Shown piece after piece: positions 5,991 to 38,291 of a stretch of 64,000 bases of DNA. Origin of the DNA: Blepharisma stoltei ATCC 30299 (lineage: Eukaryota > Protista > Ciliophora); assembly GCA_965603825.1 (NCBI GenBank), contig CBFDEM010000023.1:434001-498000 (forward strand), given 5' to 3'. Below the pieces are notes generated by a model. It was not told the origin of the DNA, searched no databases, and saw only the letters and a list, made by a program, of their open reading frames with translations. A program made the position numbers and the translations under genes. The number at the start of each line of letters is the position of its first letter. Positions within the stretch are counted from its first letter, which is position 1.

Positions 5991-7081
5991 AAGCCAATTT
6001 TCTCTCTGTGATTAGCTTATTCTTTGATACCTATATAAGAAAATCTTTGCGTTATTCCATTTACTTCAATATGCCTTGATAGTTCTTGAGATAAATTTTT
6101 ACACTAATTTATTAGTGGCAAGAAGAAACTAACACTTTCAGAATTGCCTTTTTGAACTGATGAGACCTTATTCTTGCATATATAGATTTTTTCAAATAAC
6201 TGAGAGAGGAAGTTAGTTTGTGGGATGTACAATTCGAATTCCTCGATTTAGAAGCGTAGATGGGAATGAAAATCTGGCTAGAAAAATTCAAAACTAAAGG
6301 TATCAAGAATAGCTGATAAGTCTATCGAATTTACTCTTATCTTTAGCAAATTCAGTAAGCTCTTTTCATTTTCTTCTTATAAAATTAGTTTAAAAAGTTA
6401 ATTTATTTAATATGGCTGCTGCATGATCTTTCTTTAATTTAATAGAGCGGGTGATTTTAATGTATAGAGTTAAAATATATTTTATTCTTGAAACTAGAAA
6501 ATTTGCAATAAATATACACAAATAAAATGTATAGTGCGTTGTGAGCGTTTGGAGCATCAGTTAATCTGTCTAATCTTCACAATTAGTCTGCTATTTAGCA
6601 GTTGGATAGAGTATTTATGACTGTGATGAGTAAGACAAATTTCTTGGTGTTAAAATATTTATAAAGCACTATACATTAAAAAACTTAAAAAAATTCAATT
6701 TTTTAATGTCTTTTGCTTTTATTCTGAATCATATAGCATTTATAATTCACTTAAAATAATTTTATTTGCGTGAATTTAAATCAAAAATTAATTTATTTAT
6801 AATAATTAATATTTTTTAACTTGAAAGAAGAAAAATCTATCTGCTTAAAATTAGCGAATTTTATTATTAAATTCTTCGACAACGATTATGGTAATAGCAT
6901 TTTATGAAAAATTATATGCTCATTGGCATTTATTTAATAGTTTCTTATGCTATAAATTTAATGAATTTTATATACCAACTATTTTCTACTAACTTCTGAA
7001 ATAACTTCACAACTTTTCGCAAAATATTTTTTTTAACTAACTTGCTGTTTTGATTTTTATTCCGCATCTGTAACAATAAAA

Positions 7082-10000
7082 ATGATTTCACCTCAATATC
7101 AGCTTATAATGCTACTGATATTCCTCAGCTATTTTAAAGGAGTTATTTCTTTAGAGATCATTACAGTATACCCCGAAGAAGCAGAGGAAAGCTGAAGCTC
7201 CAACTATAAACCTTTAAACATAAGCTTCTTACTTGAAAGTTTTCAAATTCTCGAGCCTTCAGCAGAAATTTATGAATGCAACATTTCAAATATTATCGAT
7301 TGCATTTCAGCTCATAAAAATGCATTAATATTGCTTGATTTATCAAATGATATTGCAATTCAGTTTTCTCTTTCTCAAGTCAGCAAAAACCATTTTTTAA
7401 TTCACTTGGTCTACCAAAAAGAAATCAAATACCTTGAGAAGTGAAGTTATTCAATTTCTTCATCCTACACAGATCAACTGAATGCATTCTTTTCAATGCT
7501 AAACTATTTTGGCTGGAAAGAAGGAGTTGTTTTTAGCAATAATATTCAATCTCAGATGAAGGAGGAAATTTATCAGTATTCGCAAGCTTTAGAATATTTA
7601 ACAATAGAATCTACCACAAATATTGATGAATTAGTAAATAAAATTGTTTACCGACTCGGTGCCAATCTTTATTATATTCTTACTGAAAATTTTGAGTCAG
7701 CGGACTTGCAATTGTGTTTAAAAAATAAAGAGCTCTTGGTCACAGGAAATGGACTCATTTTAAGTCAGGAAAGTGGCTATGGAGCAATTATTGATGGAAC
7801 TTTAATAATTACTGAAATAGGCCATGAGCTTGATAATTCATATGAAGATGTTTTGACGAAATCTGTTATAGAGATCATAACGTATATTACTAATAGAACT
7901 TCTTCTGAGAATTTTAATGAAATTTCATTATTACTAGATTCATATTTGCCCTATCATTATAAGAAAAACGAATTTTCTATTGTAAATATCCAAAACGGTG
8001 AAAGGATAATTATAGGGTCTATTATAAATGGAAATGTTACAATCTCTAGAAAAGCAAAATTTCCAGGCAAAACTGAAGCTATCCCAAAATCAATTAAAAA
8101 AATTTTGACGATAAGCATAAATGACGGAACAACAAATCCTGGAGCTTCTTCAACTCCCGTTCAGAAAACAGGGTCAATTGGAGCATATATAGCTAAAAAT
8201 AAAATTAACGAAAGCAACGATGTTTTGGCGAATTTTCAAATAAGTCTTACAAGTTTTGATTGTGGTGTGAGTATCTATAATGCTTCATTTGTAAAGTCTT
8301 GCATATCAAATGGCATTGATAGACTAGGTCTCAGCTTTCTCTCTCCTTTTGGATCGGCAGTAACTGTAGGAGTATTAAAAGCATTTGATCAACTAAAACT
8401 AAAGATGCCAACAATTGGGAGTGTAACTATGGATCCATCTTTGGCTTCTACAGACACTTATCCAATGTTTGTAAGGCTTATTGATGGCGCTATATATAGC
8501 CAAGTAATTATTGTCCTAAAAGCATTAGGATGGACAAAAGGAGCCATTATGTATGAAAATAATGGATGGGGTATACCAGCATATAAACTTGTTATAGAAA
8601 ACGCAGAAAAATCAGGATTTGAATTTATTAACCCAGAAAGCTCACGAGCAATTCCACCGTCTTTAAATAGCACAGCGATGCAAGGCTTAAAAGAAAATTT
8701 CCAAGCAGTAATAGATTGCCAAGCAAGACTATTTCTAGTGATAGTTCAGTGTCCAGCATGCAACTATGCAATAGAATTATTATATGATCTTGGGATAAGA
8801 AAAGGAGATATCATTGTTATGGCAGGAGCCCCAGAGCTTTTGAATTATTTTATACAAAATGATACAAATCTATATAAAAGATCAGAAGTTGGATACGCAG
8901 CATTAACAATTGCAAACAAGATGTTCGTAGGAGATATAGGGGCAGATACTAAAAAAAGGATTCTAGCGCAATATAATGTCCAGGGAACACCATCAATGTG
9001 CTGCTATTTTGATTCTCTTTATTTAGCTGCGAGTGCTTTGGATTATATGATTAATCGAGGACAAAATTACTCCGACTCTAGCAAAATGATAAAGGCTCTC
9101 AGAACAGTTGAAATTACAGGATGCTCAGGCAGAATAAGGATTGATAAAACCAGCAATGACAGGATATTCTATATGCATTTAATGCAAGGAATAAAAACTG
9201 ATGAAAACGGAAATCCAGCCATATATATCATAGGAGAATTAAGGCCATATAGCACAAAGATATTAACAATTACAACTCCAATAGTCTACGCAGATGGGAC
9301 AACAAACAAACCTTCTGACTTAAGAAATCAGAATGACAATTGTCCTTTTCCAACCAAAGATATCAGAACATTTGATAAAGGAAGAGGAGTTCTTTTTGCA
9401 ATTTGTTTTACTGTAGGCCTAGTTACAGCAATAACAACATTTATTATTTGAAAAAAGTGATGGAATATTTCTGTTGAGGAGCTGAAAGAAAAAGAAGAAA
9501 TTTCTTTTCAAGACTTTGTATTAGGCTTCTCGATAGCAATAGAATTTTTCCAATATACCTCTATGGGACCTGATTATTCATTTATGAGCTCATTTTTGTA
9601 TGATATTAGTAATATTCTGTCATTGAGCTTAGGTAGCGTTTTAAAGCTGGAGAATGGAGTTTTTTGGATTGTTGTTGATGGAATTTATGCAGGAATCGCT
9701 GTTTGAATCTTTCTTTGTGCAGTGGTTTTATTAAGGCTTGATGAAAAATGGCAGCATATTTGGATTTTCAGAATTTCTGGGACTGGAGCTGACTATTTGA
9801 TGCCTATTTTGGGAAATCTTTGCTTTATTCCTTTTATTTCAATATGTCTTGACATCTTTGTCTGTGATCAGTCAATTGGAGACAACTTTACTGATAGCTT
9901 CTTAGCCAAAGACTGTTATTATTTTTGCTGAAAAGATGAGCACTTAGCTTATGCCATTTTAGCATTTATAGCTCTAATTGCCTACGAGCCTTTGGCTGTA

Positions 10001-10531
10001 TTTTGCCGTCCTCTTTGGCAAGAACTACAACCAGCATTGCATGTAAAAGCTGTGCCTTTATTTTTGATGGTAAAAACAGTGGTTCAAACGGCTCTAATTG
10101 TATTAAATAAAACAGTTAAAAGATCATCAGATGTAGGCCATGGAGTTGTCTTTATTTTTATTATGATAATTTATGTTGCATTTATTTTTAGATTCAAACC
10201 TTACAACTATGCAAGATTTAGCTGATGGCAAGGATTAACTCTAGTGGGAGTTGTATGGCTTGCTATTTTATCAACAATTGAACTAGGAGTTCAAGATCAC
10301 AATATTTCAACTGTACTGCTTATTATCTTGATATTTGGCTGGATTACAATAGCTTCTATTGGATTGTACATACAACGCAAGAAATACCCAAGCTTGCTTT
10401 TCAAAAAGAAAGCAAGAGACACAAGCACATTGTTTAAATTCGCTTTTACATTTGGAAAACAATCAAAGAAATCGCTAGAAACATTTAAATCAGGCTATAA
10501 AAGTACGAAAATAATCCCGGAAAAAAGCTAA
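7082..10531 (+). CDS. Membrane receptor A: signal peptide + degenerate VFT module + ANF-receptor/Venus-flytrap (PBP type 1) domain + ~9 TM, 1149 aa
   Basis: One frame from ATG 7082 to TAA 10531 when TGA=W. GABA-B/ANF-receptor-like motifs: GSVTMDPSLASTDTYPMFVRL, LKALGWTKGAIMYE, YFDSLYLAASAL, TGCSGRIRID. Multi-pass hydrophobic C-terminal part. Confidence 0.85.
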
Positions 10532-27440: not shown

Positions 27441-30400
27441 ATGGAAGAAAGGAAATTCAATCTCCAAAAAAGTGGCAAGTTAAGCACCTCTTCTTCGTCT
27501 ATGGGGAATTCAGGCAGTCTTTCTCATAGAGGAGCAGAAATTTCTCCATTGAGAGCTTATAATGATTATTCAAGCGTGGAAACGAGGAAAATGGACCAAA
27601 CTACGTTTAGAAGCAGCGAAGAATTAACAAGAACTGCGACTTATGTTAATCCAATGCATTCTGGGAGAATTTATAAAGAAATTGAGCATATGTAAGGTTT
27701 AGGTAGAAATCGGAATAATTCGTCAAAGAAAATGACACCAAAGCCGCCATCTCAAAAACCTGAAAGTTCGATTCGGTTTGAAGGAGCGGGAAGAAGGCAA
27801 TTTAAACGAGGAAGTGGGAGCAAGCTCTCAAAATCGAAATCGCCTATAAGATCTGTTGGGAAAAGGTCATCAAAAACCCCAACGCCAAATATGAATATAC
27901 AATATCTTCCAACTTCTCCAAAAAACTTATCTCAGCCTGTATCTAAATTAATTTCAAAAGTATCACCAATGGTTAGAGAATCTAGACACAGCGAAGGATT
28001 AATTATCCCAAAAGACCAAGCTGATATTATAAGACAACACAAAAAATCAACCCCGATTGCATTAGACAAAAAATATGGACAAGATAAAAGGATTATTTTT
28101 ATGCCTTTTGAAAGCAGAGATGACACCTCAGGAGCTGTAATTTTTAACGATCATGGGTTTATTGAATTTCCTAAAGAAGAAAAACCATCAAAATTCGTGA
28201 AAAATAAAACAATAAGTGCAGAAAATTACCAAATTGAAGCTTTGCAAGCGCTATCTTTTGTAAAGAATTTTAAAAAGCGAAAAAATTTTAAAAAATGAAG
28301 AAAAGAAGTAAAAAGTGCTTTGTTTGTAAGAAAAAGGCATGAATTTGTGAGAAATTTCTGGGGGAGTCAAGTTATTGCAATGAAAGAATATGTAAAAATT
28401 AAAGAACAGATAAATACTTTTGCAACCATTAAAGAAAGCTTTTTAAATGAAGATTGGTATAGAAACAGTGCTGAAGAATCATATAAAAATATCATAAATA
28501 GTGTCAACAAATTAATGCAAAAAATTGGATCAGGGATTAAGAAAACTTTGGATGAGTCTTTAAAGACAAAATTTGGGGATAAACTTGTGTATAACAAAAT
28601 TGTCAAAATTTTAGAAGAAAAGAAAAACTCTGGCGGCAGAAGATTGAGGGAAACCAAGGAAAGCAAGCTATCTCGAGAAAAATTATTGGAGATATTTCTC
28701 AAGCTGATTTATCTTAAATATCAAAGCGGAATTGTTGAATTAGTTGAAGACACATATCAAGGATCACTTCTTTTATTTTGCAGCTCAAAAAGGCCAAAAT
28801 TTGCTCTGGTACTTTCTATTGATGATATCTTAACTTTTGTTCCAGACCCTGAAGCTTTGACAGCTAAAATTTTAGAATCTCTTGAAGCTTTTAAACAAGC
28901 AATTATTAACCATGCAATACATGATGAAATCAACTCAAATATTTTTCAAGCACAAATGTTTAACTTTGAACATATACTGGAAAATAATGGAATATTAGCA
29001 GACACAAATAAAAATATTCAGCAAAATTTTAATAAGGATATTGCACTTGCCAAAAAGTTTATCAGTAAGTTCAAATCCCTTGAACAAATTATACCAGTAA
29101 AAAAACAATGAATTACTGATATAGAAAATAAAGAGATCAATATCGGCTTATTTTTTCAGAAAAATTATAAAATTCTTGCAGGTTATTCCAGCCAGCTAAA
29201 CGAATTGCCTTTTCCAAGCTTCAAAGCAGGAATTTTTAATATTAAAACCGAATCACTAAAAACACAAATGCAAGGCTTTATGGATTCAATAAAAAGCTTA
29301 CTAAAAGAAAAACTTCCAGCTATAATTGTTAATGAAATCAACGATTTCAAAGAAAATATAAGGACATTTAGCAACCTTATCAATGAAAGATATTCATCTA
29401 TTTCACAAATTTCACAGCATTGAAAGCAGATTTCTGAGTTAAAGAAAGTTAAATTAAATGAGCTTGACAATAAAAAAGATTTTATTACTGAGAGTATAAA
29501 ATATTTAAAAAAAGAAGGGATTTCTGAAACAGCTAATGTTCTTAAAGAAGATTTATCGTATGACCAAAAACTATTTAATAATCAAATTAATGACATAGAA
29601 AAGTGTTATAAAGATTTGAGGCCAGCCCTAGAAGAGCAATTACTCGAAAATTCTTATAAATTATCAAAAAAAATCAAAAAGTTTGAAAGTAAATATATTT
29701 TGCATTATCTACAAGACACACAAAGAATTTCACATGCAAGCAACACATTAAAAGAAATAGAGAAAAGAGGAGAAGCTTTACTTTCACTAAAACAAAAAGT
29801 CGAGCTTTATGTAGATTATTATATTTCTTTACAAGAATTAAATTCAGGTAATCCTTTATCGTTTCAGCTTCAATGCAGAGGAGATTTTGATATATTGCAC
29901 ACTCTTCATAAAGACACTTTAAACCTATGAAAAATAGTCATTGATTGAAAATCTTATACTGGAAAATGAATGGAAACAAACTTTTCACAATTAAATGTCT
30001 CCAAAATGCTTGAAGATATAAAAAATATTAACGAAAAATTAAAATTTGATTGCTATGAAAGCCTTCTGTTTACAAAAACAGCAGAAAAAATAATTAAATC
30101 AATAAATGAAGAAATTAATGGATTCCTATGCATGTCTGAAACATTAATTGAGCTGAAAAGTGAACTTTTAAAGCCAAGGCACTGGGAGATGATCGTAAAT
30201 GCAATTAAAAAGCCTCATTTATTGAATATTTCTTTTAAGCTGCAAGACCTCAAAGATTCAAACTTAGACCGATATGAGTCCAAGCTTAAACATATTTTTG
30301 AGCAAGCCAAAGAAGAAAACAAGCAGACTGCTTGTTTATCAATGATTAAATCTCTATGGGAAAGCTTAGAATTATCCACTGACATCTACAAAGGACGTTT

Positions 30401-33400
30401 AGATACTTTTATTTTGACAAATATTGACCAGGTTGAATCTTTAATAGAAGAGCATTTAGCATTGATCGAAAGCATTGACAAAACAATTTATTCAGAATAT
30501 TTGCAAGATGATATAACAGAACTTAAAGAAAAACTTACACTGATGAGTGATGTGTTAGAAACATGGACAGAGTGTCAAAACTCTTGAAAGCAGCTTGAAC
30601 CAGTTTTTAGCTCAGGATATATGCAAGAGACTATGCCAAATGAGTATGAAGCTTTCAAAGATCTTCAAACTACACTAAGGTCCATTATGTGAAGTGTACA
30701 CCAAGCACCAAAAGTGCTAAACCAATTATTGGCGCCTAATAAAAGCACAGTCCTTGAAGATATATCTTCCAAAATTTGTGACCTCCGTAAGAATATCAAA
30801 GCTTATTTAGAAAATAAAAGAGCAAATTTTCCAAGGTTTTTCTTTCTCTCAGACGCTCAACTCCTACAATTTTTATCACTTATTTATTCCCAGCAAGAAT
30901 ATGATAAGCATTTATCAATAATTTTCCCTGGTGTTTCTAAATTTTATATCAAAAAATTGAACTCAAATAAGCCTATTAAAGATGAAGAGGAAGAAGTTGA
31001 CCTTGACGTCGCCCCTTTTAATTGTTTTTCTCCTGCTGTCAATGAAATAATTGATCCTTTTGAATTTTCGATCCCTGAAAATCATGAAATAATTAATATA
31101 GAAAATCAAGAAACTGAAAGCAAAGGAAATGTACAAATTTTGCAGCTAGAAGAAAGAGATGATTATATAGTAGCGAAACAAAGAAGACTGAGAGAAAAAT
31201 ATGGAGGAAGCGAGGTAGAATTAGGTGGAATGATGCCTTATGAAATTTTAGGAATGGTTGGACATAACGGAGAACTTCTTCTATTTGAAAGAGCTGTTGG
31301 GATTCATGAAGGAATTGAAGGCTGGATGGGTGAAGTTGATCACCAAATGAAAGATACCCTTGCAAAAATGATTTCTTTTGCTGTAGCAACGTTCCCAAAA
31401 CAAAGCTTAGATGAATGGGTGCTTGATTTTCCTCAGCAAATCATATATACCTCTATTTTATTGATTTTAACTCATGAAATCACAGAACTCATGGAAGATA
31501 AAGATAAAGAAAATTCTTCAGATTCCGAAGTTAGTATTGACAAAGATGACCCAATCCCAGAAATTTATGAAGATCATTTTTCTAAGGTTTATTTTGGAAG
31601 CTCAGCTCAGTCTCATTCTTTAGAACCTAGTAAAGAAGACCTTATGCGATATTTACAGAGTAAAAGCTATAAGGGTTTATATCTCAGGCTTCAATTCTGG
31701 ATAAACCAATTAATAAAAAGTTTTCAAAATGACCAGATAGGAGGTCAGAAGCTGGTTCCAGTACAAATTATGTCTTTAAGATCTTTGGTGTATTTTTTAA
31801 GCTACCAAAGAGATATTGTCGGAAATTTAATTGAAAAAAAAATTTACTCTACTGGTGATTTTGAGTGGCAAAAACTGTTTAGGGTATATTGGAAAGCAAA
31901 TGAAAGTATCAGTAAAATTGAGTGTGGAGGTTTGCATATGATTCAAGGCAATGAATATTTGGGGACTTCATATAGATTACTCTGCACTCCTATTACTACA
32001 AGATATTATGTGTTCATAAGCAGTGTTCTCAGAGAAACCTCATCTGTATTATTTAAAACCAATCCAAGCCATGACTATGCAGGCGATGTCTTTGAAGAAT
32101 TCAGCAATCTTTGTGGGATGGCCAATAAAAGGATTTATATAAGTTCAGACTCAAAAATGCAAATGCTAATGCAATGTTTAAATGGGGCTGCCCTAGCTAA
32201 TGTTTGGATTATATTTGAGCATATAGATAGGCTTAATCATGCAAACCTACAGGTATTGACAAAAGAAATACAAATGGTTCAGCAGCAGTTTCTTATAGCT
32301 GAGGTTGGAGTTGAGAGCCAGCAAGAAGATAGCATGAGGGCTCCTAAAAAAGATAGGCAGGTAATAGAACCAATCCCAGTTCCTGAAGCAGGCTCAAAAA
32401 CTTTAATAGAGAAGTCTGGCGTCGGGACTTATTCATATCCAAGCAATGAAATATCAGATTCTGTAATAAAAGAGCGGCCGCTATTAAAATACCCAAATAC
32501 TATGTTTGTTGTTATGGCTTCACTATCACCGAATCATTTTCAGAAAGACAACGCACTTTTATCAGCTTTACAATTGTCATTTAGATGCATGGAAATGATC
32601 AGGCCTGATATCAAAATGATTTCTTCGGTTATGCTTATAAGAGAAGGATTTAGGTATTATCAGTCCCTCAGTGTTCTTATCCATAAATTCACCAAAAACT
32701 TGATTGAGAAAGTCGATTATCTGCTGGCAATTACAAGAAGAGATATCATGCTTTTAGTGTTAATAGCAAAAAAGTTCAGAGATATCTGCATAAGTGAATG
32801 TGATTTAGAACAAAACGAAATAAATTCTGTTATAAAAGCATGTAGAATGCTGTTTTACCAAAAAATCACGATTCAAAGGTCAGGAAATTTAATTTTGAAT
32901 AAAGAACAGCTAAACAATTCGCAAGAAATTATAGACTGCTGCGTTGAGAGAACTTTTAAAACTGAAAAATTCCCAGATTTTGAACAAAATGATTTAAGAA
33001 AAGGCCTTGAAAAAGTTATTAAAGAAGAAGGATTAACAATCCAAGAGTCTCAGCTTCAGTTGTGTGAAGACATTTATCATGGATTAAGAATAAATAGAGG
33101 TGTTTTAATATTAGGCCCATCTATGTCAGGCAAATCTACGTCATTATCTTTATTATCATCAGCTCTCAAAAACCTCCATAAAATTGAAATTAAACAGCAC
33201 ATTTTGAACCCAAATATTTTTACTTTTAAACAACTTTTCGGAGCATTAGCAGTTGAAAAAAATATTAAAGGCGGGATTTTGACAAAAATAATGCAAATAG
33301 TAAGTGAAAAATATGAGCAAGAAACATCATGGCTTGTTTTTGATAGTAAAAATATAGAGCCTTGGTGGGCTGATTCATTTATCCCAATATTAGAGACCTC

Positions 33401-36400
33401 ACCTTTATTATATTCAGATACCATTACTTTTGAGACTTGGGAAATGTTGTTAACTCATATTTCTTCGATAGCCAGCAGACAAGATATGATTTCGCTACCA
33501 TCTATGACTCAACTTATAATACCACAAAATATGTCGATTATATATACTGCAGAAAATGCTTCCTCAGCTCCCCCAAGCTTATTTACAAGAGTTAGTTCAT
33601 TATTTGTTGACAATAAATCATTAGAATGGGAAGCAATTATTGTCCCAAGGATAAAAACAATTAGCATGAAATTGATCCCTTATGGGATTACAAGCGAGTG
33701 AATTTTAGGGTTTTTTATCGAAAAACTTAAACATTTAATTGATGAAGCTGATGAGCAATTCAAAGAATTGAGCCACTGAAATAGCAAAAATTTAATGATG
33801 GGGCTTATAAGAAATTTTGAAGTATTCTTAAGAACAGGAATTTTAGAAATATTTTCTCCATTAGAATTTGAAAAAAATATGAATATATACACAGAAGTAG
33901 AAATGAATAAACTTGTAAATAAAGAATTTATTCATAAAATCCCAGAAATCAATGAGCTGAAATCACGGCTTGAAACAACTATTATTCATTCATTTGTATG
34001 GTCTTTTGGTGCAATTCTTAATGGTGAAAACAGAAAAATATTTAATAAAATTCTTTTCAATTCCCAAAAATTATTGAAATTGAAATATTTTTATCCTCAA
34101 ACTCTGAATGCATTTGAATCATTTATAGATTTTGACAATTTTAATTTTCTCCCAATTTATGAAGAATCTTCAGTATATTTAAACGATCTTTTACCATCAA
34201 ATTCAATAATAATTCCTTCAGAAGAAATGGCAAAAGCATACTATTTATTAAATACTATTTTATCACCAACCAATTATAGCCCTCAGTCTTTTCTTCAGCA
34301 TGTTCAGATAGTAGGACCTTCAAGTTCAGGAAAAACATCCCTTATTAAGCATTTTTTACATAAGAATTCAGATTTATTTTATAGCAAACATTATACTTTC
34401 AACCCCTCAATAAAAGGTTATCATTATTTTGACATATTGCTTAAAAAATCTAATTTTTGCGAAAAAAATAGCACAATGCTTATAATAGAAGATGTTCATT
34501 TAGATGATAGCAATTTTACTTTGGAAAGAATAAAATTTTGGATTGAAAATAATGGGATTTATGATCCTAAAAAGCTTTCTTTTGTCATCTCAGAAAAAAT
34601 TAATTTTATAACCAGCACAATACAAATGAATATTCAATGTAGTAAAAATACAACTTCAATTTATATTGAGACACCAAGCGACAAAATTTATAAGCAGATT
34701 TTGGTATCCTCGATTTCAGAAAATGCTGATAGCGCAGATTTTAGTATAAATAACTACATAAAACCTATAGCTAGCATTTACCTAAATACAAAAAACTATC
34801 TTCAGAATAACAAATACTGTGGCATAGATAGAATTATTGAAAATTTCAAACAGTTCTATTATTTCTCAACAATTTCTGGAAATGAAGCTATCGAAAAAGA
34901 GTATATCAGCGAGCTTATTATGCATGAGATACAAAGAGGCTTTAGTGATTTCGTAGCAAATGATCAAGAATTTAATAAAAACCTAGTAGCTTTGATTAAT
35001 ATAAAACTTCGCACAGAAATAAAAGAAGAACCATATCTATTTTTCGATTACACAGAAAAGAATTCTAAAGAGTTTAATAATAAAATTACAGTAGAAAGAT
35101 TGCCGATTATTCAACAAAAATTAGCTGAAAAAATGAAAAAACTAGAAAAAAATTTTGAAGAAAACTTAAATATTATGACACCTTTATATTTTCAAAACTC
35201 TTATACAAACTTTATATGAAAAATTTGTAGGATACTTTATTTAGAAAATACTCATAGTATTTTGTGCGCTTCACCTGGAAATCTTTCATATGAATGCCTT
35301 CAAATTGCAGCTTCTTTAACTGATTCTAGAATTTTAAAACCACAAGTTAAGCAATTAAACGATTTTCAGCACTTCAGGTATTTTTTCGAGCAAAGCTTGA
35401 TTCAGGCTCTTGAATGTGGCCAAGAAAACCCTTGCATATTTCTTTGTGATCTCCAATATTTGAAATCCGAGGAATATATCAAACTTATTAGTTGGTTTAT
35501 TACAACTGACTCATGAGATATCAACTTGTTCTCAAAATCGTTTTCAAAGCATATTTCAAAGCGAGAAAAAGAAAATAAATTCAAAAATACTAAGCTCCAA
35601 AGCAAAACATCAGCTAGTATCATGAGTACAATTAAAAGAAGATTCCACATCGTTTTTATTTTACCATCCAATAAAGATTTTGATATTCTGTCAAAAGATT
35701 ATCCAAAATTAATTTCATGCTGTGAATTCATTAAATTCGATAAAAATAATCATGAAGGGTTTCAAAAATCTGAATCAAGTATAAATATTAATGAGATTAT
35801 AACTGATATCATGCAAATGATTGAAAATAAATTCAAAATTTTGAATGATAAAAATACGATGGAGAAACCTTTATGTGATAAGAACAAATATCCCGATTTT
35901 CTATGCCAAAAAAGGGTTTTGCTACTTATGGAAATTTTTAATGAAATTGCTTCTTATATAGAAAGCTTTATTGATTCGGTTAAAGATAATCTTAGTCAGT
36001 CTATTGGGAAATTTGATGATCTAGTATTGAAATATCCAGAGCATTCAGCTAGTTTAAAAGAAACTTTAAAAGGATTGAATCAAAAGTTATCTATATATGA
36101 AAAATTTACTAGCACTCTTATGACAGATAGTCTTATTTTAGCATGCAATTCTGTTTATCTTGGAATTGTAAGTGCTGAAGAAAAATTTGACATATGAAAA
36201 GCTTTGGCAGAATTACTACAATGCAAAGGGTTAAGTATTGATGAATGCTGGAGATCCAATGATAAATCCAAAATCAAACAAAAATTCAAAAGTTTCGCAA
36301 AAATTTTCAACAAAAATCTGAATGATTCTGATCTGTGCACATTGAATGCTCTTGAAGCTTTAATAGCTTCATCGCTTTCGAAAGGCTTATCAATATTAAT

Positions 36401-38291
36401 TGATGAACATGGGGAATTTGATAGCATTTTAGAAACAAATACAAAAGAAAAACCTATTAAGATAGTGAGCTCTTCAAGCTCTTCAGATAAGCTATGAAAA
36501 GATGGAATTACTGTTGATATTCCAATTTTCCTTTATGATTATTCTGAAATAAATCCAGAAGGAGATTTAGAGTCATGAAAAATAGGTCCAGGATACACTC
36601 GTGATGATCCTACTTATTGCATTTTATATGAGCAAAATATTTTAAATGTTTCTTCGTTTTCAAAACAGATATACTTATTTAAGCCAAGAGCTGATATGTA
36701 CCTTCCATCAATATTTTATTCATCAAGCCTGTTTAGTTGGATCTGCACTATTGATACCAAAAAATGTATTGAAAAACTGATTGAAATTTTAATGAGCCAT
36801 TTGCACCCAGACGAGTACAATATAATATTAAAAATGAAAGAAGAAATAGAAAATGCGAAAAATCAAGTTGGTGAACTGAAAAATAAAAAAATTGCAGAAA
36901 TTGAGCGCTTTGAAGATAAAAGCGACATTAACTTACTAGTGAAAATATTGTCTGAATTTAATGATATGAAAGAACTTTTAAAAGATAAGAAGAGTTCTTG
37001 CCACAATTTTTTAAAAAAATTTGAAATCCTTAAAAAACATTCTGAATATATTTTAATGATATATCTATCATTGAAGCAGACAGGCAAAATTACTGGAGAT
37101 ATTACTTACTCTTGAAAAACTTTCAAAACCATTATATCAATGATTGTTTCTAAAAGTATGAGAGACGCAATTTTAGAAGCAAACGAGCAAAGCATCGAAA
37201 GCTCCAAAGAAAGTAGTCAAGTTGTAATCGATGATGATTTTTTCAATAGAGAAATAATGCCAGCTATATTTAACGCAATAAAAAACGGCATCCCACAAAT
37301 GCATTCTTGCTTATTTTCATTAATTTTTGCGTTAAAAATTGCTGTGAAAAGATCTGTGATTTCTGATATGGATTTTGCTTTATTTGGAAAATTTTTTGCA
37401 AAAAATAAAATTTCTTTAACATGAATGTCAATTTTGGATAAAGAAGTTCCAACATGCGATACCTGGAAAGAAATATACGGGGCTTTGACCACAGAAATTC
37501 TGCCGTCCCATCCTGAAATTGAAGATTGCATTTTAGAACTAAATGCAAAAATATCACAAATGAAATGCAATATGAAAAAAGTTTCCTCCATTTTTAAAAC
37601 AGTCCTATTAAATTCGGACTATAAGAACTTGCCTGTATTTTCAAGGATATTGATTGCAGTTCATTATCAAGATTTCACATTAAAATCCTTACTAAGACAA
37701 TTTATTTTTGAGCAGCTGAATTCGCTATTTGAGTATCAAGAAGAATTTGCAAAATTAAGCCACTTTATAAAATGTGCAAGCTGGTCTCTTCCATTAGCAT
37801 TGTTTTCTAGCCCTGGAATGAATGTTGTTAATACAATATGCTCATTAGCAAATTATTATGGAGTTGGATTAGAAGTAATAAGAACTGATCCAGAAATGGA
37901 CCAAGACAATAAAGGAGAAAATTCAGAAACAGTTGAGCTTGTTTTGAGATGCGCCACAGAAGGGACATGGGTTTTGATCTCTACCTCGAAATTCCCAAGT
38001 TTTTGGAATAATGTGACGGAAGGCTTGAAATACTTGAGGGAGAGCAGTGTTATTAGTAATACATTCAGACTTTTTATAGATATGCAGGGGCTGAGACATT
38101 ATGATATACCAGATCAATTTTTACATGATGAAGCAGTGAGATTTTATATTTCAAAAACAAATATGGAAGATTTAGAAGGATATAATGATATTTGGAGCAA
38201 TCTGTTGTTAGAAGACATACTGAAAGTTGAAAGCTTAGCGAGAGGAGAATCTACACTGTTTCCAGAAGATTTTGAATTAGACTTTGAGTAA
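27441..38291 (+). CDS. Divergent dynein-heavy-chain-like protein (~3611 aa), probably motor-dead and lacking the stalk/MTBD
   Basis: After the 15-nt intron 27692-27706, the + strand ORF fragments from 27732 to 37425 are in one frame joined only by TGA. Linker motifs LKPRHWEMI, CQNS-W-KQLEPVFSS, KRANFPRFFFLSD, DFEWQKLFRVYW, GNEYLG; AAA2 GPSMSGKST; AAA3 GPSSSGKTS; AAA6-like EGTWVLI...FRLFI. Confidence 0.9.
27692..27706 (+). other. 15-nt spliceosomal intron
   Basis: GTAAGGTTTAGGTAG. Removal deletes an in-frame TAA and fuses ORF 27441 to ORF 27732. Confidence 0.85.

What the first reader, a model, noticed from the sequence alone, without database searches (positions are those of the whole stretch)
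35880..38291. The same dynein-like protein appears to lack the stalk/microtubule-binding domain and the C-terminal domain
Seen: after the AAA4 end (RRFHIVFILPS), the helix that normally starts the stalk (QKRVLLLMEIF, ~35907; canonical TP.SYLELI..F) is only ~70 codons from the post-stalk motif (LMTDSLILACNSVYLG, ~36117; canonical LVGD.LL.AAF..YLGPF). Known: in motor dyneins this interval is a few hundred residues and holds CC1-MTBD-CC2. The protein also stops ~60-70 aa after the AAA6-like FRLFI motif. Inference: together with the dead AAA1, this is a linker plus AAA ring that cannot walk on microtubules or bind them through an MTBD. It may be an undescribed repurposed dynein class, and is my best candidate for a novel system here.
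Basis: partly seen in the sequence, partly recalled or inferred. Interest (0 to 1): 0.85.

Follow-up and report, generated by a model that had tools for sequence, protein, structure and literature searches.

The report
Stalkless dead dynein in ciliate Blepharisma
Blepharisma carries an intact gene for a dynein motor protein that has lost its engine site and the whole arm that grips microtubules, and it belongs to an undescribed ciliate family of non-motor dyneins whose two Blepharisma copies appear to have split the old job between them.

Summary
Confirmed and not an artefact. The gene (27441-38291, UGA=Trp; Blepharisma stoltei CAG9319683, 3,611 aa) has 71 residues between the stalk landmarks, against 315-357 in 47 ordinary dyneins. 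It ends 75 residues after the AAA6 motif (usual about 511), so the AAA6 small subdomain is missing as well as the C-terminal domain. A second organism's contig (about 90% identical) spans the region in one piece with the frame kept. The gene belongs to an unnamed, well-supported ciliate family with a DNAH6-like tail, dead AAA1 and a cut after AAA6L, but all 13 relatives I could measure keep a 300-350-residue stalk. Stalk loss was seen only in this Blepharisma copy. A second Blepharisma copy (contig C33) keeps the stalk but lost about half of AAA5L and an N-terminal peptide. The two conserve largely opposite parts: this one linker-AAA1-AAA2L and AAA5-AAA6L, the other tail and AAA3-AAA4-stalk. 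Best reading: a non-motor scaffold produced by subfunctionalisation. Non-motile dyneins are known (DNAHX; DNHD1 predicted); I found no natural stalkless one in the papers searched. The scan noted the dead AAA1 on this window before.

The parts
27441..27691 (+). Exon 1 (ATG at 27441); N-terminal peptide conserved in orthologs and not found in the C33 paralog region
   Evidence: Public model P0173 (3,611 aa) matches this start plus a 15-nt intron; 48-58% identity to short upstream ORFs of three ortholog loci, no hit in the C33 region
27692..27706 (+). 15-nt GT..AG intron, frame-keeping
   Evidence: Sequence; length of the public model
28107..29990 (+). [quoted passage not shown]
   Evidence: Family tail profile hits axonemal single-head chains including three DNAH6 chains, best E 2e-16; identities
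29991..31946 (+). Neck and linker (DHC_N2), well conserved (56%)
   Evidence: Pfam DHC_N2 E 1e-30 and 2e-23
31947..32993 (+). AAA1, catalytically dead: Walker A replaced (about 32052-32075), Walker B DE replaced by EH (about 32217-32222)
   Evidence: Alignment to PDB dynein; same loss in every family member that aligned
32994..34205 (+). AAA2, P-loop intact at 33114-33137
34206..35204 (+). AAA3, P-loop intact at 34314-34337 (lost in ortholog P0008)
   Evidence: Pfam AAA_7 E 2e-6
35205..35906 (+). AAA4, P-loop degenerate
   Evidence: Pfam AAA_8 weak
35907..36116 (+). Stalk stump: CC1 base, short turn (~36033-36044), CC2 base; about 254 residues including the whole MTBD are missing relative to orthologs
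   Evidence: intact in reads
36117..36761 (+). Post-stalk helix and degenerate AAA5 large subdomain (215 aa here, 102 aa in the C33 paralog)
   Evidence: ortholog L051 gives Pfam AAA_9 E 7e-5 for this part
36762..37037 (+). Buttress hairpin, present but diverged (19% identity against 30% for C33; difference not significant, p 0.15)
37038..37628 (+). Rest of AAA5 small subdomain and connector
37629..38291 (+). AAA6 large subdomain plus a conserved acidic end; stop at 38289-38291; no AAA6S, no C-terminal domain. Most conserved part of the protein (66%)
   Evidence: Pfam Dynein_heavy E 6e-5, no AAA_lid_11 or Dynein_C; Atlas nearest clusters are PF03028

Best explanation
A functional, non-motor dynein heavy chain that acts as a scaffold or regulator, most likely in or on the way to cilia. 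Shown: an ancestral ciliate gene with an inner-arm (DNAH6-type) tail lost the AAA1 ATPase site, AAA6S and the C-sequence but kept a stalk. Blepharisma has two copies. This one lacks the stalk and MTBD, leaving a short hairpin, and preferentially conserves linker, AAA1, AAA2L, AAA5 and AAA6L. The C33 copy preferentially conserves the tail and AAA3-AAA4-stalk and lacks half of AAA5L. Inferred: the copies arose by duplication and divided the ancestral contacts. This protein supplies a protein-binding face built from linker, AAA1 and the exposed AAA6L with its acidic end; the C33 protein supplies tail docking and the stalk contact. They may act in one complex or at neighbouring sites. It neither walks on microtubules nor binds them through an MTBD.
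For: Dead AAA1, 71-aa stump, early stop. Family is one side of a branch at 100 (SH-aLRT, quick tree). Tail profile matches single-head inner arms. Sites matching ortholog P0172 in one copy only, window:C33 - tail 53:170, linker-AAA1-AAA2L 230:111, AAA2S-AAA4-stalk 78:180, post-stalk 123:71 (p 2e-15, 1e-10, 2e-10, 2e-4); same direction with the more distant P0008, though the middle block is not significant there. The blocks roughly match the two ring halves of Niekamp 2019 (PMC6600642). Purifying selection: 28 of 40 listed differences to the second organism are at third positions and 27 of 37 codons are synonymous. Precedent for working non-motile heavy chains: DNAHX (PMC11785096).
Against: No localisation, partner or phenotype data. 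Expression is not shown: only a run guessed to be RNA covers parts of the gene, with a gap over the stump. Domain blocks were drawn after seeing the data; AAA5L does not fit the published ring halves, and AAA2S flips with the choice of reference. The tree does not settle whether the two copies are sisters (AU p 0.22; best tree puts C33 with the stalked orthologs). Single-copy status of the orthologs' genomes is not proven. The codon sample is 40 of about 560 differences.
Confidence: 0.55

Rival explanations
1. Cytoplasmic assembly or transport factor: it pairs with a real dynein head, or with the C33 copy, to keep it inactive or carry it into cilia, like the dynein-X heterodimer, rather than sitting in the axoneme.
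For: DNAHX forms heterodimers and phi particles (PMC11785096). The linker and AAA1 face is the conserved part here; its tail is relaxed, so independent docking is doubtful.
Against: Phi particles include a stalk-stalk crossing, which a stump cannot make. The tail is of single-headed type.
Confidence: 0.17
2. A duplicate under relaxed selection on its way to a pseudogene; the C33 copy does the real job.
For: Largest deletion in the family; long branch over the whole protein; tail and AAA3-4 drift; expression not shown.
Against: 3.6k-codon frame intact in two organisms about 10% apart, with compensated indels; mostly synonymous changes; linker, AAA1 and AAA6L are better conserved than in C33, which itself lacks parts kept here.
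Confidence: 0.1
3. An ATP-using remodeller driven by AAA2/AAA3 rather than AAA1, a dynein ring turned into a midasin-like machine.
For: AAA2 and AAA3 P-loops and an acidic Walker B in AAA3 are present.
Against: AAA3 is among the least conserved parts here (26%) and its P-loop is lost in ortholog P0008; the ring lacks AAA6S.
Confidence: 0.08
4. Split dynein: the missing stalk-MTBD is supplied in trans by stand-alone stalk mini-proteins in this genome.
For: A 225-aa stand-alone stalk-MTBD gene exists on contig C46; the scan noted more such genes.
Against: The mini-protein resembles ordinary stalks (E to 1e-19), not the family stalk (E above 0.2). The family stalk finds a strong hit only at C33 in the genome. 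AAA1 is dead, so no motor would result.
Confidence: 0.06
5. Assembly deletion or annotation artefact.
For: The best-matching DNA runs may be the source of the assembly.
Against: An independent organism and study give one contig across the stump with no large insertion; no joints. The deletion keeps frame and, by eye, coiled-coil register at both ends.
Confidence: 0.02

Closest known systems
Class-9 single-headed inner-arm dyneins (DNAH6/DNAH14, IAD5; Kollmar 2016, PMC5100056)
   Same: Tail profile matches DNAH6 and related single-head chains; linker-AAA1 to AAA6L order kept; best motor-region scores are DNAH6-like.
   Different: AAA1 dead; no stalk/MTBD; no AAA6S or C-sequence; motor region sits on a long separate branch.
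DNAHX / dynein-X (Chai et al. 2025, PMC11785096)
   Same: Non-motile heavy chain with degenerate AAA1 and a disabled microtubule arm; kept by selection.
   Different: Animal, outer-arm derived, longer than normal through insertions; stalk distorted but present; C-terminal cap present; AAA1 still binds ATP. Reported absent in protists.
DNHD1 (Kollmar class 11) and class 12
   Same: Orphan heavy chains; DNHD1 lacks Walker B residues; class 12 has a stalk region without typical MTBD or coiled coil.
   Different: Animal or holozoan; class 12 has an outer-arm-type tail and an altered rather than deleted stalk; loss of AAA6S is not described for them.
Ascomycete and diatom cytoplasmic dyneins without the distal C-sequence
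   Same: Short C-terminus.
   Different: [quoted passage not shown]
Blepharisma paralog on contig C33 (CAG9323337) and unnamed ciliate orthologs P0008, P0170-P0172, P0280, P0281, L044, L049, L051, L053, L054
   Same: Same family: dead AAA1, end 57-158 aa after the AAA6 motif, conserved AAA6L.
   Different: All keep a 300-350-aa stalk; C33 lacks half of AAA5L and the N-terminal peptide.

Membership tests
Motor dynein heavy chain | Linker followed by tandem AAA modules | tested here: met
   Pfam DHC_N2, AAA_6, lid, AAA_7, AAA_8 (weak), Dynein_heavy (weak) in order
Motor dynein heavy chain | Intact AAA1 Walker A and B | tested here: not met
Motor dynein heavy chain | CC1-MTBD-CC2 stalk | tested here: not met
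   71 aa against 315-357
Motor dynein heavy chain | Buttress in AAA5S | tested here: met
   92-aa segment aligned to family and canonical buttress, diverged
Motor dynein heavy chain | AAA6 small subdomain and C-sequence | tested here: not met
   Stop 75 aa after the AAA6 motif; no AAA_lid_11 or Dynein_C
Motor dynein heavy chain | ATP-driven microtubule movement | not testable with these tools
   Needs a bench assay; excluded by anatomy
Class 9 (DNAH6/14) | Class-9-type tail | tested here: met
   Profile E 2e-16 to 1e-2 against single-head axonemal chains, DNAH6 the only named ones; the class of the top unnamed chains was not verified
Class 9 (DNAH6/14) | Motor domain groups inside class 9 | tested here: inconclusive
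   Family forms its own long branch; quick tree, midpoint root
DNAHX | Outer-arm origin, over 5,000 aa, insertions in stalk and AAA4S | tested here: not met
   3,611 aa, inner-arm tail, deletion not insertion
Kollmar classes 10-17 (incl. DNHD1) | Motor-domain clade with class members | not tested
   No labelled class 10-17 sequences in my tree; their reported taxa (fungi, Holozoa, oomycetes) exclude ciliates
Unnamed ciliate dead-AAA1 family (this work) | One clade, dead AAA1, end soon after AAA6L | tested here: met
Unnamed ciliate dead-AAA1 family (this work) | Stalk of 300-350 aa, as in all other members measured | tested here: not met
   Derived loss in this copy

The most novel reading that the evidence does not exclude
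A ciliate-wide, unnamed class of dead dyneins forms a ciliary scaffold with an open ring lacking AAA6S, and in Blepharisma one such dynein has been divided between two proteins that keep opposite halves of the ring and work together, one of them the first natural dynein with no stalk.
Probability: 0.3. Interest if true: 0.8.

Novelty: new variant of a known kind. Interest (0 to 1): 0.62.

Why it matters
The stalk is described as present in all dyneins (PMC4047620), and Kollmar 2016 calls the C-sequence in principle essential. Here a natural heavy chain kept by selection has neither, and its whole family lacks AAA6S. It adds an apparently ciliate class to the orphan dyneins (Kollmar 2016 lists none for ciliates) and an independent origin of non-motile dynein beside DNAHX and DNHD1. 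The paralog pair is a natural dissection: it points to which surfaces (linker-AAA1-AAA6L against tail-AAA3-AAA4-stalk) carry the non-motor jobs, so the open question of what dead dyneins do becomes testable, for example by knockdown in a heterotrich ciliate.

Tried and rejected
Pfam MT as a test: useless, stalked relatives also miss. Single-sequence AlphaFold: low confidence overall (46.8 and 44.3); Foldseek on the stump gave nothing at E 0.001. L054 first looked like a second stalkless member, but the apparent landmark was a probable intron read through; the true span is 1,028 nt. A 16-nt GT..AG at 36024 in the stump turn was rejected as an intron: splicing would break the conserved downstream frame. 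One MAFFT run misplaced the stump; the ortholog alignment fixed it. Synteny with ortholog loci: only one weak VPS13-like hit and an LRR hit, inconclusive. Sister test of the two copies unresolved; one tree run crashed. No named Tetrahymena, Paramecium, Oxytricha or Stentor protein came up; given length and word limits this is not proof of absence. Kollmar's supplements are not held, so a ciliate 'orphan' there cannot be excluded. Two crystal-structure papers on engineered stalk-truncated dynein were not held. Paper searches found no natural stalkless dynein.
Full report
Source and gene. The window lies in a 41.5-Mb, 64-contig genome. One frame runs from 27696 to 38288 when TGA is read through; 13 of its 17 TGA codons face Trp in standard-code orthologs. 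A public Blepharisma stoltei protein of 3,611 aa (CAG9319683, named only 'Dynein heavy chain') is this gene, starting at 27441 with a 15-nt intron at 27692-27706. TGA was read as Trp only inside local scripts.

The observation. Pfam finds linker and AAA1, 2, 3, 4 and 6 signals in order, and no MT, AAA_lid_11 or Dynein_C. The span between the stalk-start and stalk-end landmarks is 71 residues; in 47 named dyneins it is 315-357. What remains looks in register, by eye, with the base of CC1 (about 40 residues) and the base of CC2 (about 28), joined by a short turn near 36033-36044. AlphaFold on this piece gives helix, one-residue break, helix; the model is single-sequence and I did not check antiparallel packing. 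The protein stops 75 residues after the AAA6 motif; the canonical median is 511. By the yeast boundaries (PMC4047620) this removes AAA6S as well as the C-terminal domain. AAA1 lacks Walker A and Walker B. AAA2 and AAA3 P-loops are intact, AAA4 is degenerate.

Not an artefact. One DNA contig spans 32600-38500 without a difference, but may be the source sample. A contig from a second organism and study spans it in one piece with 561 substitutions; the indels listed inside the ORF are a 3-nt loss and two compensated pairs, and no joints are seen. Of the 40 differences listed, 28 are at third codon positions and 27 of 37 codons are synonymous; this is a small sample, mostly from AAA1. A run guessed to be RNA covers parts of the gene but not the stump, so expression is not shown.

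The family. A profile search gave a clear group (about 20 hits at E below 1e-65) above the first full-length ordinary dyneins (about 1e-45). It includes full-length proteins from gene-dense, standard-code contigs (heterotrich-like, inferred), a Euplotes-type chromosome with C4A4 telomere, TGA read-through and AAA-TAA frameshifts (L044), a C4A4 contig with TAA/TAG read-through (L043) and a C4A4 standard-code contig (L054). Host names are not given, so 'ciliate-wide' is an inference from codes and telomeres; L053 could not be placed. The 19 members form one side of a branch with full SH-aLRT support in a quick tree. All that aligned have a dead AAA1 and end 57-158 residues after the AAA6 motif, with no AAA6S or C-domain hit (L044 runs off its contig). 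The tail profile matches single-headed axonemal dyneins, with DNAH6 the only named hits, which suggests an inner-arm origin.

The stalk is kept elsewhere. Seven full-length relatives have spans of 300-348 aa, five genomic loci have 984-1,035 nt, and P0017 is the L054 gene itself; that is 12 independent loci, 13 counting the C33 genomic copy and its public protein apart. A profile of these stalks aligns end to end with the DNAH10 stalk (E 4e-5). CC1 and CC2 are well conserved and the MTBD part is not. Stalk loss is therefore a derived trait of this copy, not the class mark.

Two copies, complementary losses. The genome holds a second member on contig C33 (32% identical). It has a 325-aa stalk but only 102 of about 219 residues of the post-stalk AAA5L region, a shortened AAA5S, and no match to the exon-1 peptide. 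Counting sites where only one copy matches ortholog P0172 (window:C33): tail 53:170, linker-AAA1-AAA2L 230:111, AAA2S-AAA4-stalk 78:180, post-stalk to end 123:71; AAA6L alone 66:16. The directions hold with the distant P0008, though the middle block is then not significant (p 0.1). Niekamp et al. (PMC6600642) divide the working ring into AAA5S-AAA6-AAA1-AAA2L and AAA2S-AAA3-AAA4-AAA5L; the pattern here follows that split except for AAA5L. The blocks were chosen after seeing the data. Whether the two copies are sisters is open: not rejected (AU 0.22), but the best tree joins C33 with the stalked orthologs.

How it most likely works. Shown: no ATPase site 1, no stalk, no MTBD, no AAA6S, so no motor. 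Supported on a small sample: kept by selection. Inferred: it offers a binding surface of linker, AAA1 and AAA6L with a conserved acidic end, while the C33 protein keeps tail docking and the stalk contact; both descend from one dead scaffold dynein of ciliates. A ciliary site is inferred from the tail only, and this copy's tail is relaxed, so it may be recruited through the partner. Rivals: cytoplasmic assembly factor, decaying duplicate, AAA3-driven remodeller, and trans-complementation by stand-alone stalk proteins. The last is weak: the C46 mini-protein resembles ordinary stalks, not the family's, and no other family-type stalk was found in the genome.

Comparison with what is known. Non-motile heavy chains exist: DNAHX (PMC11785096) has a degenerate AAA1 and a folded-back stalk, forms a heterodimer and is reported absent from protists; DNHD1 (class 11) lacks Walker B; class 12 has an odd stalk without MTBD (PMC5100056). 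Kollmar's table places the Tetrahymena heavy chains in classes 1-9 and names no ciliate class; his orphan list could not be read. I found no report of a natural stalk deletion or of AAA6S loss in the library searched, which lacks most subscription papers. From memory, not verified here: the yeast crystal construct removed a similar length of stalk and still folded.

Verdict. Real feature; new variant of a known kind (non-motile orphan dynein).

Noticed in passing
G000:C33:682707-693374 (+); L023/L024/L048: Paralog (CAG9323337, 3,548 aa): dead AAA1, full stalk with divergent MTBD, about half of AAA5L and part of AAA5S deleted, ends after AAA6L.
   Followed up: yes
L027:7631-8308 (-) = G000:C46:697631-698308: 225-aa stand-alone stalk-MTBD gene with no motor, closest to ordinary dynein stalks.
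   Followed up: partly
G000:C23:73350-87137 (+); L025/L026: Another very divergent heavy chain (4,596-codon frame, very long branch, not among the Pfam MT hits), outside this family; a further orphan candidate.
   Followed up: partly
G000:C41:610895-620617 (-); L037/L038: Divergent heavy chain with weak MT hit, non-standard AAA1 P-loop and 7 TGA in the linker; frame ends in AAA5S, probably at an intron.
   Followed up: no
L052:8001-13364 (P0164) with upstream ORF 6270-7961: Family member that appears to stop within AAA3, followed directly by an ion-channel gene: a still shorter version with no AAA4-AAA6.
   Followed up: partly
L044:1-13686: Euplotes-type ortholog with several AAA-TAA +1 frameshift sites, one inside CC1 of the stalk (about 10285-10291).
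   Followed up: partly
G000:C58:330284-330751 (L041): Isolated partial DHC_N2 hit with no AAA1 hit nearby, at the end of a 1,131-codon frame: possible tail-only dynein fragment.
   Followed up: no
window:38410-39171 (+): Next gene starts MGCG, a likely myristoylation/palmitoylation signal, with a K/E-rich repeat; separate from the dynein gene.
   Followed up: no
window:40758-48260 (-): 2,501-codon frame whose start resembles a VPS13 N-terminal domain; a VPS13-like gene also neighbours ortholog L055, weak synteny at best.
   Followed up: partly
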